From IMG/VR virus record IMGVR_UViG_3300027834_000005, positions 283,233 through 347,232 of that record: 64,000 nucleotides of DNA; one strand, given 5' to 3'. Each line of letters opens with the position of its first letter. Within the stretch, counting starts at the first letter, position 1. A program made the translations under genes and the position numbers. This document shows positions 5,750 to 12,433 of the stretch, piece by piece. The notes below the pieces were generated by a model. That model saw nothing but the letters and a program-made list of their open reading frames with translations, ran no database searches and was not told the origin of the DNA.

Positions 5750-5778
5750 TTGACAATTAGTTAGAGAGGTACTATAAT
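5750..5778 (+). promoter_or_regulatory. Perfect-consensus sigma70 promoter
   Basis: TTGACA-17 bp-TATAAT. Confidence 0.75.
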
Positions 5779-8363: not shown

Positions 8364-8792
8364 ATGGAAATTTCTAGGACGTTAGAGGAGCAACTCAGTT
8401 ATTTAGAGATGGCTCTTTTCAATGGAGTATTCAGTGAAGATAAGCTTGCGGATCATTTGCAATGTGTGATGCAAGATAAACTGGCAGGGCATGACCCTAT
8501 GGCATATGATTCAGCTACGTGTAAACAGTTGAACCTAAATAAATATAGCGACCTGACAGATTACAGTACCGTTTATCCAGCTAGGCATAGTATTTTTACT
8601 GAGATGGCTAATGAGATAACTATTCTGGTTAAACGTAATGAAGTATTAGAAGCCGAAGTAAAAACGTTATGCGAAGACCGTACTAGACATGATAATAGAT
8701 TACGTAATCTTGAAGATAAAGTGAATGTTTTAGTACAAACGCACAACGCTAAAGCAGAACATGAATCTGCTATACAGACGAGGATTTATTAA
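8364..8792 (+). CDS. Hypothetical protein with C-terminal coiled coil
   Basis: Tightly packed ORF; heptad-like L/V pattern near the C-terminus. Confidence 0.55.
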   Translation: MEISRTLEEQLSYLEMALFNGVFSEDKLADHLQCVMQDKLAGHDPMAYDSATCKQLNLNKYSDLTDYSTVYPARHSIFTEMANEITILVKRNEVLEAEVKTLCEDRTRHDNRLRNLEDKVNVLVQTHNAKAEHESAIQTRIY

Positions 8793-10006
8793 TGAGTGAA
8801 TTATGTACTTTTTGTGGTAAAGGAAAAGGCGAGGTTGATTTACTTATATCAGGACCGTTAGACTCTGAAGGTGTACCATCAGCCTACATTTGTAGTGAAT
8901 GTACTGGTGTCGCTGAAGAGTTCGTATTAGAAATGAAAGCGGATGAGGCTGCACTTGATAAAGTTGAGTGTACCAAGTCCATTTTGTATCCTAATGATAT
9001 TAAGAATCAATTAGATGAGTACGTGGTTGGTCAAAATAGCGCTAAAGAAAAGTTATCAGTGGCGATATTCAATCATAAGAAAAGAATTGCCATGGTTAAT
9101 CGTGGTGAGGACACAGTGGAAAAGTCAAATATTCTAATGGTAGGACCATCAGGTAGTGGTAAGACGTTATTATTGAAGACTATTACTAAGATTGCTGACG
9201 TTCCGTGCATTGTCGCTAACAGCACCTCTCTCACTGAGGCAGGTTATGTAGGGCAAGACGTAGAAAGTATCTTTGAGGACCTTCTTATGGCCGCTGACGG
9301 CGATATAGATAAGGCACAGCAAGGTATTGTGTTCTTAGATGAGATTGATAAGAAAGCTAAGGCAAAAACAGGCGGTAGTGGTAGGGATATCTCAGGCGAA
9401 GGCGTACAGCAAGCTTTATTGAAGCTAGTTGAGGGCACAGAGCTTATGATCAACCCTAATCCGAAGAATAAGCAACCATTAACGTTGGTTCCATTCAACA
9501 CTAAGGACATTTTGTTCATAGCTGGTGGTGCATTCGTTGGGTTGGATGATATAGCTAAGAAAAGAGATGCTGGCACGACCATGGGTCTATCTGCAACTCT
9601 TACTAATAGTGATGAGGCCACAGTGCCTAAGATATCATCTGAAGATTTGAGTAAGTATGGTCTTATACGGGAATTCATTGGTAGATTCCCTATCATGGTA
9701 ACTCTGCAACCACTAAGCGTGGATATGCTGAAAAGAATTATCGTGGAACCTAAGAATAGCATATTCTCTCAATTTAAAGACTTGTTTGCGGTTGAAGAAA
9801 TAGAATTGGTATTCACAGAAGAATACCTAGAGTACTTGGCTTCAAAAGCCATAGAGCACAAGACTGGGGCCAGAGGCCTTAGAAGAAGTCTTGAAGAAGA
9901 TCTTAGTGGCGTACAGTTCGATCTTAAAAAACATAAAAATGATAATGTCATACGTGTAGTCGTTGGAGACAAAGGTATCATTACATTAGAAAAGGAAGAT
10001 ACATGA
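8792..10006 (+). CDS. clpX: ATP-dependent Clp protease ATPase subunit ClpX
   Basis: N-terminal CxxC...CxxC zinc domain, GPSGSGKT, EAGYVGQDVE, LDEIDK, RDISGEGVQQALLK, GARGLR. Confidence 0.96.
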   Translation: MSELCTFCGKGKGEVDLLISGPLDSEGVPSAYICSECTGVAEEFVLEMKADEAALDKVECTKSILYPNDIKNQLDEYVVGQNSAKEKLSVAIFNHKKRIAMVNRGEDTVEKSNILMVGPSGSGKTLLLKTITKIADVPCIVANSTSLTEAGYVGQDVESIFEDLLMAADGDIDKAQQGIVFLDEIDKKAKAKTGGSGRDISGEGVQQALLKLVEGTELMINPNPKNKQPLTLVPFNTKDILFIAGGAFVGLDDIAKKRDAGTTMGLSATLTNSDEATVPKISSEDLSKYGLIREFIGRFPIMVTLQPLSVDMLKRIIVEPKNSIFSQFKDLFAVEEIELVFTEEYLEYLASKAIEHKTGARGLRRSLEEDLSGVQFDLKKHKNDNVIRVVVGDKGIITLEKEDT

Positions 10007-10239
10007 AAGGTCCAGTAAGGATAGAAGGTCTTGCGGTAGAAGTTAAAGGTAACTTCGAACGCGCATTAAGGATGTTCAGTAAAAAAGTACAAAGCTCAGG
10101 ACTCATTCGTGAGTTGAGAGAAAGAGAGCACTACGAGAAGAAGACGTCTAAGCGAAAGAAAGATAAGGCAGCTGCAAGTCGTAGAGAGCAAAAGCGCGTC
10201 AGAGATAATAGCCCTGAAGCACAACACAGAAAAAGATAA
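10003..10239 (+). CDS. rpsU: Phage-encoded 30S ribosomal protein bS21
   Basis: FERALRMFSKKVQSSGLIRELREREHYEK..KRK..KAAA; basic C-terminus; ATGA overlap with clpX. Confidence 0.88.
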   Translation: MKGPVRIEGLAVEVKGNFERALRMFSKKVQSSGLIRELREREHYEKKTSKRKKDKAAASRREQKRVRDNSPEAQHRKR

Positions 10240-10302
10240 ATACTATTATCAGTTGTTTTTTTGATCTTATTTGTAAATAAAGCTTCCCTTAACGGGGAAA
10301 GT

Positions 10303-10331
10303 TTGTTACAATAGCGCAAAATTAATATACT
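10303..10331 (+). promoter_or_regulatory. sigma70-like promoter upstream of clpS
   Basis: TTGTTA-17 bp-TATACT, followed by SD AGGAG and ATG 10352. Confidence 0.55.
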
Positions 10332-10351
10332 GATGGTAGGAGATACCGACA

Positions 10352-10657
10352 ATGAGCACACAAACATGCGAAGACACTATGGTTTTGGAAGAAGTTCAGA
10401 TTAAGGAACCTTCCACGTATCAAGTAGTTTTCTTGAACGACGATAAAACCCACATTGAATTTGTGGTGGATGTATTAGCTTCAGTATTTCACAAAACATT
10501 AGTGGATGCGGAAATGGTTACCTTACAGATTCATCATACTGGGCGTGGCATTGCCGGTGTATACAGTGAGGAAATTGCCGAGACTAAGCAAGAAGAGACT
10601 ACGAAATTGGCTCGCGCCAATGGATTCCCTCTTCAAGTTGTGGTTGAGGAAGTGTAA
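10352..10657 (+). CDS. clpS: N-degron adaptor ClpS
   Basis: YQVVFLNDDKTHIEFVVDVL, IHHTGRGIAGVYSEEIAETK, GFPL. Confidence 0.95.
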   Translation: MSTQTCEDTMVLEEVQIKEPSTYQVVFLNDDKTHIEFVVDVLASVFHKTLVDAEMVTLQIHHTGRGIAGVYSEEIAETKQEETTKLARANGFPLQVVVEEV

Positions 10658-11572: not shown

Positions 11573-11573
11573 G

Positions 11574-11599
11574 AAAACATGTTGAAAACATGTTATAAT
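11574..11599 (+). promoter_or_regulatory. Extended -10 promoter overlapped by a tandem palindromic repeat
   Basis: AAAACATGTT-G-AAAACATGTT; TGtTATAAT at 11591-11599. Confidence 0.55.
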
Positions 11600-11630
11600 T
11601 GATTCAGATTATCCATTAACAGAGGTATAT

Positions 11631-11864
11631 ATGACGACTCCCCAACATAACACAGGTCCTATCCCACCAGCCACAGAATGTGAGTGGCCGGTGTCGATAG
11701 ACGAGCGTGGCATAGTTTTCTGCCATAGCAAGCAAATTAAATCTGGATCAAGTTACTGCGCTGAACACCATTCAGAAGCCTATTACTCTCCATCTAACCA
11801 AGATGATATCGACTTAGCAGAAGTTGACACAAACACTGTTGAGATCGATCCACTGAGAGAATAG
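11631..11864 (+). CDS. GcrA C-terminal-domain-like protein
   Basis: CEWP...FC...YCAEH...AY matches the GcrA C-terminal pattern CxWP...FCG...YCxxH...AY; SD GAGG. Confidence 0.65.
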   Translation: MTTPQHNTGPIPPATECEWPVSIDERGIVFCHSKQIKSGSSYCAEHHSEAYYSPSNQDDIDLAEVDTNTVEIDPLRE

Positions 11865-12146
11865 ATGACGTATCATGTAACTGGGTTGGTGTCGGAGCCG
11901 ACGTTATTTTTCTCCGATGATGGCGTTTCATTGTTTACAGATCCAAACGAGAAGTGGTTTATTAGTGAAGTATTAGATCGTTTGGTATCAAAGGACACAA
12001 AAAAAGTGTATTCGGTGGAACTATTTGGTAAGAACGCCAATATAAATCCTGGTCTACGGCGCATGGAACTATCTGTGCGACTTCAAGAGATTGATGATAG
12101 TGGAGCAGATAGTATTGACGATAAGGTTTTGGTGTATAGCAAATGA
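11865..12146 (+). CDS. Hypothetical protein
   Basis: Starts immediately after the upstream stop. Confidence 0.55.
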   Translation: MTYHVTGLVSEPTLFFSDDGVSLFTDPNEKWFISEVLDRLVSKDTKKVYSVELFGKNANINPGLRRMELSVRLQEIDDSGADSIDDKVLVYSK

Positions 12147-12433
12147 TTGATGTGGCCTACGTATTTATATCACAGTTTTTTATGATTTTATTAGTGGGCC
12201 TCAATCAATTAAATGTGGTTCACAACCATATTTATATGGCAATGACGACATCACTGCTCATCAGTGTGTGTAGCTTTTATAACGTCAACGCCATATCACA
12301 GACAGAGGCATACTCACCTACATGGTTTGCTTTTATAATTGCCGGTGGTATAGCTATTGGGGCATCTATGAAATTGCATCCTATAATGGTTAGAGCATTT
12401 AACAAGGCAGATAAAAATGACACAGATACTTGA
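12143..12433 (+). CDS. Small multi-pass membrane protein
   Basis: Three hydrophobic segments; ATGA-type coupling. Confidence 0.6.
   Translation: MIDVAYVFISQFFMILLVGLNQLNVVHNHIYMAMTTSLLISVCSFYNVNAISQTEAYSPTWFAFIIAGGIAIGASMKLHPIMVRAFNKADKNDTDT

What the first reader, a model, noticed from the sequence alone, without database searches (positions are those of the whole stretch)
11631..11864. Stand-alone GcrA-like C-terminal (sigma70-contact) domain without a DNA-binding domain
Seen: a 77-aa protein with CEWP...FC...YCAEH...AY plus an acidic tail and no N-terminal HTH. Established: alphaproteobacterial GcrA binds methylated GANTC through its N-terminal domain and contacts sigma70 through its C-terminal region. 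Inference: a sigma70-binding decoy or appropriator that could displace host GcrA or retune RNA polymerase for the many phage sigma70 promoters. The J-domain looks gammaproteobacterial, so the target host is uncertain.
Basis: partly seen in the sequence, partly recalled or inferred. Interest (0 to 1): 0.65.

Follow-up and report, generated by a model that had tools for sequence, protein, structure and literature searches.

The report
Stand-alone GcrA sigma-binding zinc domain
[quoted passage not shown] It belongs to a conserved, undescribed family that also occurs in the cultured Pseudomonas phage PA5oct, so its function can be tested directly.

Summary
Window 11631-11864 (+) is a real 77-aa gene with its own ribosome-binding site and an extended -10 promoter. 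Residues 14-52 are a GcrA-type CCCH zinc sigma-interaction domain (SID). No GcrA DNA-binding domain is detectable anywhere in the 347-kb phage record.

It is not a one-off or a remnant. An exhaustive search found 11 further representatives of 67-86 aa. They sit in the same gene order (ClpX, S21, ClpS, three small ORFs, this gene) in marine contigs and are under purifying selection.

A diverged member sits at the same position in Pseudomonas phage PA5oct (EST35_0264, annotated "hypothetical"). PA5oct is the closest cultured relative (portal 60% identical).

The family differs from GcrA in three consistent ways:
- it has no DNA-binding domain or linker;
- Glu is invariant where GcrA has Lys119;
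- the tail is acidic (-5 to -11) where GcrA's basic patch clamps the non-template strand.

My best reading is a protein that docks on the host primary sigma factor and retunes the holoenzyme, probably by weakening open complexes. Displacing host GcrA is less likely, because the nearest cultured kin infect a host class without GcrA. Binding has only weak computational support. This is a new variant of a known kind, of moderate-to-high interest.

The parts
11573..11594 (+). Perfect tandem duplication of an 11-mer (GAAAACATGTT x2, each holding the palindrome AACATGTT). It lies just upstream of, and runs into, the extended -10. It could be an operator, but it is not seen in the orthologous loci.
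   Evidence: Only these two exact copies occur in the window. One-mismatch copies are not clearly above chance (6 against a mean of 2.0; 3 of 100 shuffles reach 6).
11591..11599 (+). Extended -10 promoter element TGTTATAAT, with no -35 at proper spacing, 31 nt upstream of the ATG.
   Evidence: The equivalent TGnTAT(A/T)(A/C)T sits in the same spacer of orthologous loci L013, L015 and L017. That it acts as a promoter is inferred.
11621..11625 (+). Ribosome-binding site AGAGG, 5 nt before the start codon.
   Evidence: read directly from the sequence.
11631..11864 (+). Coding sequence of the 77-aa stand-alone SID protein (stop codon included).
11670..11786 (+). Residues 14-52: GcrA-type CCCH zinc sigma-interaction domain. 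Zinc ligands are C17, C31, C43 and H46, spaced C-X13-C-X11-C-X2-H. Interface-equivalent residues are W19, G27, I28, F30, Y42, A50 and Y51.
   Evidence: Pfam. PDB alignment to 5yix_B. AF2 pLDDT is 88-96 over residues 11-50. VIA-align's top two of 48,161 chains are GcrA SID structures 5yix_B (Z 2.5, rmsd 2.5 A, 38 residues) and 7ye2_G (Z 2.2, rmsd 3.0 A, 43 residues). Residue roles are from PMC5887438.
11793..11861 (+). Residues 55-77: acidic C-terminal tail. The whole segment after A50-Y51 has net charge -7, and the motif DLAEVDTNTVEIDPL is shared with the closest relatives. It takes the place of GcrA's basic patch.
   Evidence: The basic-patch function is from PMC9976885.
11865..12146 (+). Downstream 93-aa ORF of unknown function. 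It starts directly after the stop codon here and overlaps it by 4 nt in relatives. It is conserved next to the SID gene in the marine clade but not in PA5oct.
   Evidence: It is listed as context; a functional link is not shown.
8792..10657 (+). Conserved upstream block of ClpX-like ATPase (8792-10006), ribosomal protein S21 (10003-10239) and ClpS (10352-10657). It marks the syntenic position of the SID gene in all relatives, PA5oct included.
   Evidence: Pfam. Synteny in L015, L017 and L018 and in PA5oct.

Best explanation
The gene encodes a small zinc-finger protein that is the sigma-interaction domain (SID) of GcrA on its own. I propose that it docks on domain 2 of the host primary sigma factor, on the groove formed by region 1.2 and the coiled coil leading to the non-conserved region, so that it travels with sigma70-holoenzyme to every promoter.

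It has no DNA-binding domain and no linker, so it cannot select methylated GANTC promoters as GcrA does. Where GcrA carries a basic patch that holds the non-template discriminator strand and stabilises the open complex, this family carries an acidic tail. I therefore expect it to weaken or re-weight open-complex formation, not to activate. Host promoters with unstable open complexes would lose out. The phage's many consensus -35/-10 promoters, and later its own sigma factor, would keep working.

Shown: the domain identity, the absence of a DNA-binding domain, family conservation, synteny, the charge reversal, the promoter content, and the phage-encoded sigma.

Inferred: binding to sigma70, which host sigma is bound, and the direction of the effect.
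For: Domain identity:
- Pfam GcrA E 1.1e-5 over residues 15-56.
- The best PDB sequence hit is the Caulobacter GcrA SID.
- hhalign of the family against SIDs of longer GcrA-like proteins gives 98.7%, E 1.8e-16.
- Nine of the eleven other marine members exceed the Pfam cut-off.
- The AF2 core is confident. Of 48,161 PDB representatives, the only chains above Z 2 besides one weak row are GcrA SIDs 5yix_B and 7ye2_G.

Interface:
- All four zinc ligands are kept.
- W120, G129, F132, Y142 and Y151 equivalents are identical, and F130 is Ile.

Precedent:
- GcrA lacking its N-terminal domain still localises to sigma70 promoters, and the C-terminal domain alone binds sigma70 (PMC4647560).
- Basic-patch residues K157-159 contact non-template positions -7 to -4, and deleting the patch lowers activation (PMC9976885).
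- The family's tails carry -5 to -11, against 0 to +5 in the longer GcrA-like proteins.

A real, selected gene:
- 11 further representatives of 67-86 aa.
- Conserved synteny.
- pN 0.28-0.42 against pS 0.68-0.96.
- The family is one side of a single tree branch, support 87/82.

Context:
- 33 perfect sigma70 consensus promoters against 0-2 in shuffles.
- A phage sigma with regions 2 and 4 only.
- PA5oct depends on the host RNA polymerase (PMC7318152).

Complex prediction with Caulobacter sigma70 residues 128-487 and zinc: 'weak support', median score 0.43 against best control 0.01.
- The mark was reached by 58 of 80 solved complexes and 2 of 110 mismatched pairs.
- At 0.60 or under it was reached by only 7 of those 80 solved complexes and by both mismatches that passed.
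- The runs agree in at least 44% of contacts, and partner pLDDT is at least 58.
Against: - No experiment exists.
- The complex score is weak and may reflect memory of the solved 5YIX complex.
- Two polar residues needed in the Caulobacter pair are not kept. Lys119 is an invariant Glu and the Asp124 position is Ile.
- The closest cultured relatives infect Pseudomonas. Its sigma70 has Glu at both positions (Caulobacter A136 and A143) where A136E and A143R abolish GcrA binding. E. coli has Asp at both.
- The PA5oct orthologue has also lost the F130 and F132 equivalents. Canonical docking in a gammaproteobacterial host is therefore doubtful.
- Foldseek found no match, and the VIA Z-scores are low in absolute terms.
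- A phage that depends on sigma70 promoters has limited use for a blunt sigma70 inhibitor.
- The host of this phage is unknown.
Confidence: 0.45

Rival explanations
1. GcrA decoy. The protein occupies the GcrA site on sigma70 of an alphaproteobacterial host. This displaces host GcrA and shuts off GcrA-dependent cell-cycle genes, without any activity of its own.
For: The hydrophobic interface residues and zinc ligands of GcrA are retained in the marine members. Phages of Alphaproteobacteria do carry GcrA homologues (PMC3556154). One tail-like protein of this phage has its best cultured matches in Caulobacter and Brevundimonas phages at about 36% identity. The predicted complex with Caulobacter sigma70 cleared the controls, though weakly.
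Against: The portal is closest to Pseudomonas phage PA5oct (59.6%), against 47-48% for Agrobacterium and Sinorhizobium phages. PA5oct-like phages carry the orthologue, and GcrA is confined to Alphaproteobacteria. That restriction is established knowledge; here PF07750 rang in Caulobacter but not in E. coli among the controls. The invariant Lys-to-Glu change and the conserved acidic tail are not needed for a passive decoy. The phage has no CcrM-type methyltransferase and no GANTC bias.
Confidence: 0.12
2. Sigma-switch or proteolysis adaptor. The SID holds sigma70 while the conserved C-terminal peptide docks on another machine, for example the phage ClpX-like ATPase encoded four genes upstream. 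Sigma70 would be sequestered or degraded, freeing core polymerase for the phage sigma late in infection.
For: The gene lies in a block with ClpX and ClpS that is conserved from the marine clade to PA5oct, where FtsH also follows. The phage encodes its own sigma. The closest members share a specific tail motif, not just acidity. Known ClpX adaptors use short C-terminal docking peptides (general knowledge, not tested here).
Against: Shared ancestry alone explains the synteny. The tail motif is not conserved in the more distant members or in PA5oct.
Confidence: 0.1
3. The same fold with a different partner. The CCCH knuckle has been re-used to bind something other than the primary sigma factor, such as another polymerase subunit, a phage protein, a defence protein or nucleic acid.
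For: Two polar contact residues of GcrA are changed throughout the family. The PA5oct member has also lost two hydrophobic anchors and has a basic core of +5. Gammaproteobacterial sigma70 differs at positions critical for GcrA binding. The complex support is weak.
Against: The residues that stay invariant across the marine family (W19, Y42, A50, Y51) or nearly so (F30) are the ones that form the sigma70 interface in GcrA, beyond what zinc binding needs. No other partner is suggested by any search.
Confidence: 0.25
4. A decaying remnant of a full-length phage GcrA gene, with no function.
For: The window protein scores just under the Pfam cut-off.
Against: The same 67-86-aa architecture recurs in 11 other representatives that have diverged to 34-55% identity. 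Synonymous sites are saturated but the motifs are conserved. The gene has its own promoter-like element and ribosome-binding site at each locus examined. No trace of a DNA-binding domain exists in any frame. The protein is 100% identical in 11 PA5oct-like isolates.
Confidence: 0.02

Closest known systems
Caulobacter crescentus GcrA (PF07750; structures 5YIX, 7YE1, 7YE2)
   Same: The C-terminal CCCH zinc sigma-interaction domain is shared. All four ligands are kept, the spacing is similar (C-X13-C-X11-C-X2-H against C-X14-C-X9-C-X2-H), and the W, G, F, Y, A-Y interface residues are present. It is the best PDB match by both sequence and structure.
   Different: - No N-terminal m6A-GANTC-reading HTH and no ~60-residue linker.
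- Acidic tail instead of basic patch K157-159.
- Invariant Glu for Lys119.
- 77 aa against 173 aa.
- Scores 16 bits against the 280-bit cut-off of NCBIfam's GcrA equivalog model.
- Encoded by a phage whose nearest cultured kin infect a gammaproteobacterium.
Phage-encoded full-length GcrA homologues (phiCbK gp222, Atu_ph08 gp5, Senya and Shash; IMG/VR loci L003-L007)
   Same: They are phage-borne and carry the same SID.
   Different: Those proteins span about 170-220 residues of open frame, with the HTH domain and a neutral or basic C-terminus. They occur in phages of Alphaproteobacteria and are thought to act like GcrA. The mini family forms a separate branch.
Pseudomonas phage PA5oct EST35_0264 (QCG76145.1), annotated 'hypothetical protein'
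   Same: It is 75 aa, with the C-E-W ... C ... Y-C-x-x-H ... A-Y pattern and an acidic tail. It sits at the same position after ClpX, S21, ClpS and three small ORFs. It matches the family profile at E 5.8e-9.
   Different: It is only 29% identical. The first loop is shorter, the F130 and F132 equivalents are lost, and the core is basic. An intrinsic terminator follows it directly.
Domain-shuffled GcrA pieces in other phages
   Same: The SID acts as a portable module. A 114.8-kb IMG/VR phage (L012) fuses it to a DnaA-C-type HTH in a 413-aa protein. Brevundimonas phage Kabachok carries the GcrA DNA-binding domain without a SID.
   Different: Those proteins keep or replace a DNA-binding domain. 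This family has none.
Sigma-domain-2 cofactors without sequence-specific DNA binding (actinobacterial RbpA, enterobacterial Crl) and small phage regulators of host polymerase (T4 AsiA, T7 Gp2)
   Same: They work in a similar way: small proteins that ride on or block holoenzyme through protein contacts. Charged tails or linkers act on promoter DNA or mimic it. The GcrA authors draw the RbpA comparison themselves. The rest is from general knowledge.
   Different: There is no sequence or fold relationship. AsiA targets sigma region 4 and Gp2 targets the beta-prime jaw.

Membership tests
GcrA cell-cycle regulator (PF07750 / NCBIfam NF050816) | [quoted passage not shown] | tested here: not met
   The Pfam match covers only profile positions 109-150. 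The ORF cannot be extended. A six-frame PF07750 search of the whole 347-kb record finds no N-terminal part.
GcrA cell-cycle regulator (PF07750 / NCBIfam NF050816) | Long flexible linker joining the two domains | tested here: not met
   Only 13-16 residues precede the first zinc ligand.
GcrA cell-cycle regulator (PF07750 / NCBIfam NF050816) | C-terminal CCCH zinc sigma-interaction domain | tested here: met
   C17, C31, C43 and H46 align to C118, C133, C143 and H146. They are invariant in the family. hhalign gives 98.7%. The top structural matches are 5yix_B and 7ye2_G.
GcrA cell-cycle regulator (PF07750 / NCBIfam NF050816) | Residues required for sigma70 binding in two-hybrid tests (K119, W120, D124, G129, F130, F132, Y142, Y151) | tested here: inconclusive
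   W, G, F132, Y142 and Y151 are identical and F130 is Ile. K119 is an invariant Glu and the D124 position is Ile.
GcrA cell-cycle regulator (PF07750 / NCBIfam NF050816) | C-terminal basic patch that contacts the non-template discriminator strand | tested here: not met
   Tail net charge is -7 here and -5 to -11 in 10 of the other 11 representatives and in PA5oct. The longer GcrA-like proteins have 0 to +5. The function is from PMC9976885.
GcrA cell-cycle regulator (PF07750 / NCBIfam NF050816) | Score above the curated family cut-offs | tested here: inconclusive
   Pfam gives 26.3 bits against 26.9 for this protein, while 9 of 11 relatives pass with 27.5-35.2 bits. The NCBIfam equivalog gives 16.2 bits against 280, a clear fail, so it is not a GcrA equivalog.
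GcrA cell-cycle regulator (PF07750 / NCBIfam NF050816) | Physical binding to domain 2 of the primary sigma factor | not testable with these tools
   There is only a prediction. It gave weak support: 0.43 against best control 0.01. The mark was reached by 58 of 80 solved and 2 of 110 mismatched pairs, but at 0.60 or under by only 7 of the 80 solved and by both mismatches that passed. Contact agreement is at least 44% and partner pLDDT at least 58. It may reflect memory of 5YIX.
GcrA cell-cycle regulator (PF07750 / NCBIfam NF050816) | Alphaproteobacterial setting (host with CcrM methylation and GcrA) | tested here: inconclusive
   The host is unknown. The portal is closest to Pseudomonas phages. 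The phage has no CcrM-type methyltransferase and no GANTC bias. One tail protein points to Caulobacter-type phages.
Stand-alone SID mini-proteins of PA5oct-like jumbo phages (family delineated here) | 67-86 aa; an (A)T-x-C-E-W motif with invariant Glu; CCCH; A-Y; acidic tail; located after ClpX, S21, ClpS and three small ORFs | tested here: met
   Alignment A1, synteny, tail charges, and a single branch in the tree with support 87/82.

The most novel reading that the evidence does not exclude
Jumbo phages related to PA5oct have turned the sigma-interaction domain of GcrA, a regulator thought to be confined to Alphaproteobacteria, into a new class of sigma70-directed takeover factor that works in other hosts, Pseudomonas included. 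The domain anchors on sigma domain 2. The acidic tail, replacing GcrA's strand-clamping basic patch, inverts the activity from stabilising to destabilising open complexes. Host transcription is thereby biased towards the phage's consensus promoters or towards the phage sigma.
Probability: 0.22. Interest if true: 0.8.

Novelty: new variant of a known kind. Interest (0 to 1): 0.6.

Why it matters
GcrA is treated as an alphaproteobacterial cell-cycle regulator, and its sigma-interaction domain as part of a two-domain activator. Here the domain exists alone as a conserved phage gene, with the one accessory element of known function (the basic patch) reversed in charge. It occurs in a phage lineage whose cultured members infect Pseudomonas aeruginosa.

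If it binds sigma70, it would be a new route of phage control over host RNA polymerase. It would also be a natural experiment on what the SID and the patch each contribute.

PA5oct grows on laboratory strain PAO1 and already has transcriptome and proteome data. Its "hypothetical protein" EST35_0264 is therefore a ready handle for testing. The fusion of the same domain to a DnaA-type HTH in another phage suggests that the SID is a portable "attach to sigma70" module.

Tried and rejected
- Word-index protein search: found only the protein itself.
- tblastn of the window protein against 50,697 phage records: no match at E up to 1. The PA5oct member appeared only with the family profile.
- megablast of 5 kb against phages: no match.
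- PHROGs: no family for this protein or its small neighbours.
- Foldseek against the PDB: nothing below E 1.
- Host inference from the ClpX-like protein in 185,579 genomes: uninformative.
- GANTC frequency: as expected from composition, 1106 observed against 1041 expected.
- CcrM-type methyltransferase: none found.
- Single-member scan of IMG/VR: found nothing.
- PA5oct paper supplements: not held, so the expression class of EST35_0264 could not be read.
- RNA runs: none hold the sequence.
- Sigma70 from Pseudomonas or E. coli: not tested in a complex, because only one job was allowed and it went to the Caulobacter sigma that has a solved reference.
- First fetch from genomes: failed on the server and was repeated with fewer regions.
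- Pseudogene reading: rejected on conservation.

Full report
**The observation**

Window 11631-11864 (+) is a 77-codon ORF. It has GAGG 5 nt before the ATG. A 58-nt spacer after the upstream ORF's stop codon contains TGTTATAAT, an extended -10 with no properly spaced -35.

The protein has C17-E-W-P, F30-C31, Y42-C43-A-E-H46 and A50-Y51, followed by a 26-residue tail of net charge -7. Pfam's GcrA model matches residues 15-56 to its positions 109-150 of 155 (E 1.1e-5; 26.3 bits against a 26.9-bit cut-off). The best PDB sequence match is chain B of 5YIX, the Caulobacter GcrA sigma-interacting domain (SID) (E 0.035).

The window is the last 64 kb of a 347,232-bp IMG/VR virus record, 94% complete and 40% G+C. 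A six-frame search of that whole record with the GcrA model finds only this C-terminal match. The absence of a DNA-binding domain is therefore real, not an artefact of ORF calling.

**What the domain is, from the literature**

Wu et al. 2018 (PMC5887438) describe the GcrA SID as residues 105-152: loops held by a CCCH zinc site (C118, C133, C143, H146). It inserts L110, L113, W120, P125, F130, F132, Y142, V149, A150 and Y151 into a groove of sigma70 domain 2.

- In two-hybrid tests, W120A, G129D, F130A, F132A, Y142A, Y151A, K119A and D124A lose binding.
- On the sigma side, A136E and A143R are among the mutations that lose binding.
- Haakonsen et al. 2015 (PMC4647560) showed that the C-terminal domain alone binds sigma70, and that GcrA without its N-terminal domain still sits at sigma70 promoters.

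Using the HMMER alignment:
- all four zinc ligands are kept in the window protein;
- W120, G129, F132, Y142, A150 and Y151 are identical;
- F130 is Ile;
- K119 is Glu, the D124 position is Ile, and V149 is Glu.

**It is a family, not an accident**

The word-index search found only the protein itself. The exhaustive HMMER search of 1.84 billion representatives found 14 others at E up to 0.001. Eleven of them are 67-86 aa, and only two clearly are longer GcrA-like proteins (181 and 140 aa).

In the alignment of the 12 short proteins, T15, C17, E18, W19, C31, Y42, C43, H46, A50 and Y51 are invariant and F30 nearly so. The closest members also share the tail motif D(L/I)xx(V/I)DxNTVEIDPL.

- Nine of the eleven relatives pass Pfam's cut-off.
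- Profile-profile comparison with the SIDs of eight longer (mostly full-length) GcrA-like proteins gives 98.7% probability, E 1.8e-16.
- In a tree of the SIDs, the short proteins lie on one side of a single branch (support 87/82; 90% of bootstrap trees).

Contigs that carry relatives show the same gene order as the window: ribonucleotide reductase ... thymidylate synthase, ClpX-like ATPase, ribosomal protein S21, ClpS, three small ORFs, the SID gene, a 93-94-aa ORF, a holin-like ORF, dihydrofolate reductase (window annotation).

Between orthologues, synonymous sites are saturated (pS 0.68-0.96) while pN is 0.28-0.42. Where dN/dS can be computed it is 0.14-0.22. Each orthologous locus has TGnTAT(A/T)(A/C)T in the spacer before the gene.

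The ESM Atlas lists viral clusters of about 80-aa look-alikes with 82-146 members. This is a lead only.

**How the family differs from GcrA**

Three differences are consistent:
1. There is no DNA-binding domain and no linker.
2. Glu is invariant where the longer proteins have K, R, Q or E.
3. The tail is acidic: -5 to -11 in 11 of the 12 short proteins, and -5 in the PA5oct member. One is neutral. The longer proteins carry 0 to +5 (the P0008 row of that script is mis-parsed and does not count).

The third difference falls on an element of known function. In the cryo-EM structure of the GcrA activation complex, basic-patch residues K157-159 approach the phosphates of non-template positions -7 to -4. 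Deleting the patch lowers activation. The patch also explains the residual activity of GcrA without its DNA-binding domain (PMC9976885). In the window protein the equivalent positions are Q57-D58-D59.

**Structure and complex**

AlphaFold2 with a 20-row alignment gives mean pLDDT 80.8, with 88-96 over residues 11-50. Foldseek finds nothing.

The exhaustive VIA-align search of 48,161 PDB representatives returns only three chains with Z of 2 or more. The top two are GcrA SIDs:
- 5yix_B: Z 2.5, rmsd 2.5 A, 38 of 48 residues, 34% identity;
- 7ye2_G: Z 2.2, rmsd 3.0 A, 43 residues.

The absolute Z is low, as expected for a 40-residue loop-rich knuckle. The ranking is what counts.

The verdict was "weak support": scores 0.49, 0.43 and 0.25 (median 0.43) against a best control of 0.01.
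- The mark was reached by 58 of 80 solved complexes and 2 of 110 mismatched pairs.
- At 0.60 or under it was reached by only 7 of those 80 solved complexes and by both mismatches that passed.
- The runs agree in at least 44% of contacts, and partner pLDDT is at least 58.
- Because 5YIX is solved, the pass may reflect likeness rather than binding.

**Who is the host?**

The sequence occurs in marine and marine-sediment metagenomes. One tail-like protein has its best cultured matches in Caulobacter and Brevundimonas jumbo siphophages at about 36% identity.

The T4-type portal is 59.6% identical to that of Pseudomonas phage PA5oct and its ten sequenced relatives. It is 47-48% identical to Agrobacterium phage Atu_ph07 and Sinorhizobium phage Phosso, and 44-45% to Vibrio, Xanthomonas and Escherichia jumbo phages.

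Searching four of these genomes with the family profile gave these results:
- PA5oct has a 75-aa ORF matching at E 5.8e-9.
- Atu_ph07 and the Vibrio phage have none.
- Phosso has only a broken, insignificant match.

The PA5oct ORF is EST35_0264, annotated "hypothetical protein". It lies after ClpX, S21, ClpS and three small ORFs. It has C-E-W, C, Y-C-x-x-H, A-Y and an acidic tail, but a shorter first loop, no F130 or F132 equivalents and a basic core. It is identical in all 11 PA5oct-like records and nests within the marine sequences in the tree.

PA5oct depends on host RNA polymerase (it is rifampicin-sensitive and encodes no polymerase) and uses TTGAC/TATAATA promoters (PMC7318152). The window's genome likewise has 33 perfect TTGAC-N16-18-TATAAT on its main coding strand, against 0-2 in shuffles. 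It also encodes a sigma factor with regions 2 and 4 only.

The host is thus most likely not Caulobacter-like and is plausibly a marine gammaproteobacterium. An alphaproteobacterium is not excluded. The ClpX-based attempt to name a host failed.

**A complication for canonical docking**

Region 1.2 sequences printed by the PDB search read as follows:

| Organism | Region 1.2 sequence |
|---|---|
| Caulobacter | LLSREGEIAIAKRIEAGRDT |
| 617-residue RpoD of 7xya (the length of P. aeruginosa RpoD, from my knowledge) | LLTREGEIEIAKRIEEGIRE |
| E. coli | LLTREGEIDIAKRIEDGINQ |

The two alanines whose mutation to Glu or Arg abolishes GcrA binding are therefore naturally Glu/Glu or Asp/Asp in these gammaproteobacteria. 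If the family binds such a sigma, it must do so with altered contacts. The basic, less hydrophobic core of the PA5oct member would fit that. The marine members, with canonical hydrophobic anchors, would fit an Ala-type groove. Both points are inference.

**Most likely mechanism**

The protein is a sigma70-riding module without promoter selectivity of its own, and its acidic tail sits where GcrA's basic patch clamps the non-template strand. I expect it to lower open-complex stability or otherwise re-weight promoter use. That would disadvantage host promoters relative to the phage's consensus promoters, or ease the hand-over to the phage sigma.

I put 0.45 on "binds the primary sigma and modulates holoenzyme". 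Within that, the direction of the effect is a guess. The rivals are:
- a different partner for the same fold (0.25);
- a GcrA decoy in an alphaproteobacterial host (0.12);
- an adaptor linking sigma70 to the neighbouring Clp machinery (0.10);
- a dead remnant (0.02).

**Comparison with what is known**

Full-length GcrA homologues in phages of Alphaproteobacteria are described (PMC3556154, PMC6630229, PMC13459779, PMC9437464). I found no paper describing a SID-only protein or any GcrA-related protein in PA5oct-like phages.

It fails membership as a GcrA equivalog: there is no DNA-binding domain, no linker and no basic patch, and it scores 16 bits against the 280-bit NCBIfam cut-off. It does share the SID. 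Other phages shuffle the same parts:
- a 114.8-kb IMG/VR phage fuses the SID to a DnaA-C-type HTH;
- Brevundimonas phage Kabachok carries the DNA-binding domain without a SID.

I rate this a new variant of a known kind.

Noticed in passing
whole genome G000; in the window at 5750, 8268, 19750, 25321 and 52903 (+): There are 33 perfect TTGAC-N16-18-TATAAT promoters on the main coding strand and 3 on the other, against 0-2 in ten mononucleotide shuffles. The phage evidently relies on host sigma70-holoenzyme with near-consensus promoters, as reported for PA5oct.
   Followed up: partly
G000:C1 about 8400-9170 (locus L019 1399-2169), outside the window: A phage-encoded sigma factor of about 257 aa has weak matches to Sigma70 regions 2 and 4 and no region 1.2. 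It is probably a middle or late sigma.
   Followed up: partly
window 8792-10657: A ClpX-like ATPase, ribosomal protein S21 and ClpS form a block conserved from the marine clade to PA5oct. The ClpX-like protein is closest (about 44%) to ClpX paralogue-like genes of Riflebacteria, Nitrospinales and Lentisphaera, not to any obvious host group.
   Followed up: partly
L012 457-1695 (IMGVR_UViG_3300033997_000310, 114.8 kb, direct terminal repeats, visibly G+C-rich): A 413-aa protein combines a DnaA C-terminal-type HTH (PF08299, E 5.5e-9) with a C-terminal GcrA SID (28 bits, over the cut-off). The SID is here attached to a different DNA-binding domain.
   Followed up: partly
L011 (Brevundimonas phage vB_BpoS-Kabachok, ON529852.1 about 114022-114237, minus strand): The GcrA model matches only positions 2-74 (the DNA-binding domain, 42 bits), in a protein with no CCCH domain. 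This is the opposite half-GcrA. CcrPW and CcrColossus have no GcrA match.
   Followed up: partly
window 11573-11594: A perfect tandem repeat of GAAAACATGTT, each copy with the palindrome AACATGTT, abuts the extended -10 of the SID gene. It is not found at the orthologous loci and could be a local operator.
   Followed up: partly
window 11885-11906 and the equivalent places in L013, L015 and L017: A hairpin followed by a T-run lies 20-45 nt inside the downstream 93-aa ORF. The stem sequences differ between loci but still pair. The T-run encodes a conserved Phe-Phe, so this may be coding conservation rather than an attenuator. In PA5oct a strong intrinsic terminator directly follows the orthologue.
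   Followed up: partly
window 12143-12433: A 96-aa membrane protein matches PHROG 7045 (holin, E 8.5e-11). It sits between the SID neighbour and dihydrofolate reductase, far from any obvious lysis cassette.
   Followed up: no
G000:C1 125461-137460 (minus strand), outside the window: A single 3,999-codon ORF is followed by a 1,342-codon ORF. These are giant proteins that I did not examine.
   Followed up: no
whole record: The same 77-aa protein is recorded on a second contig of 410,284 bp, so the complete genome may be larger than the 347-kb record.
   Followed up: no
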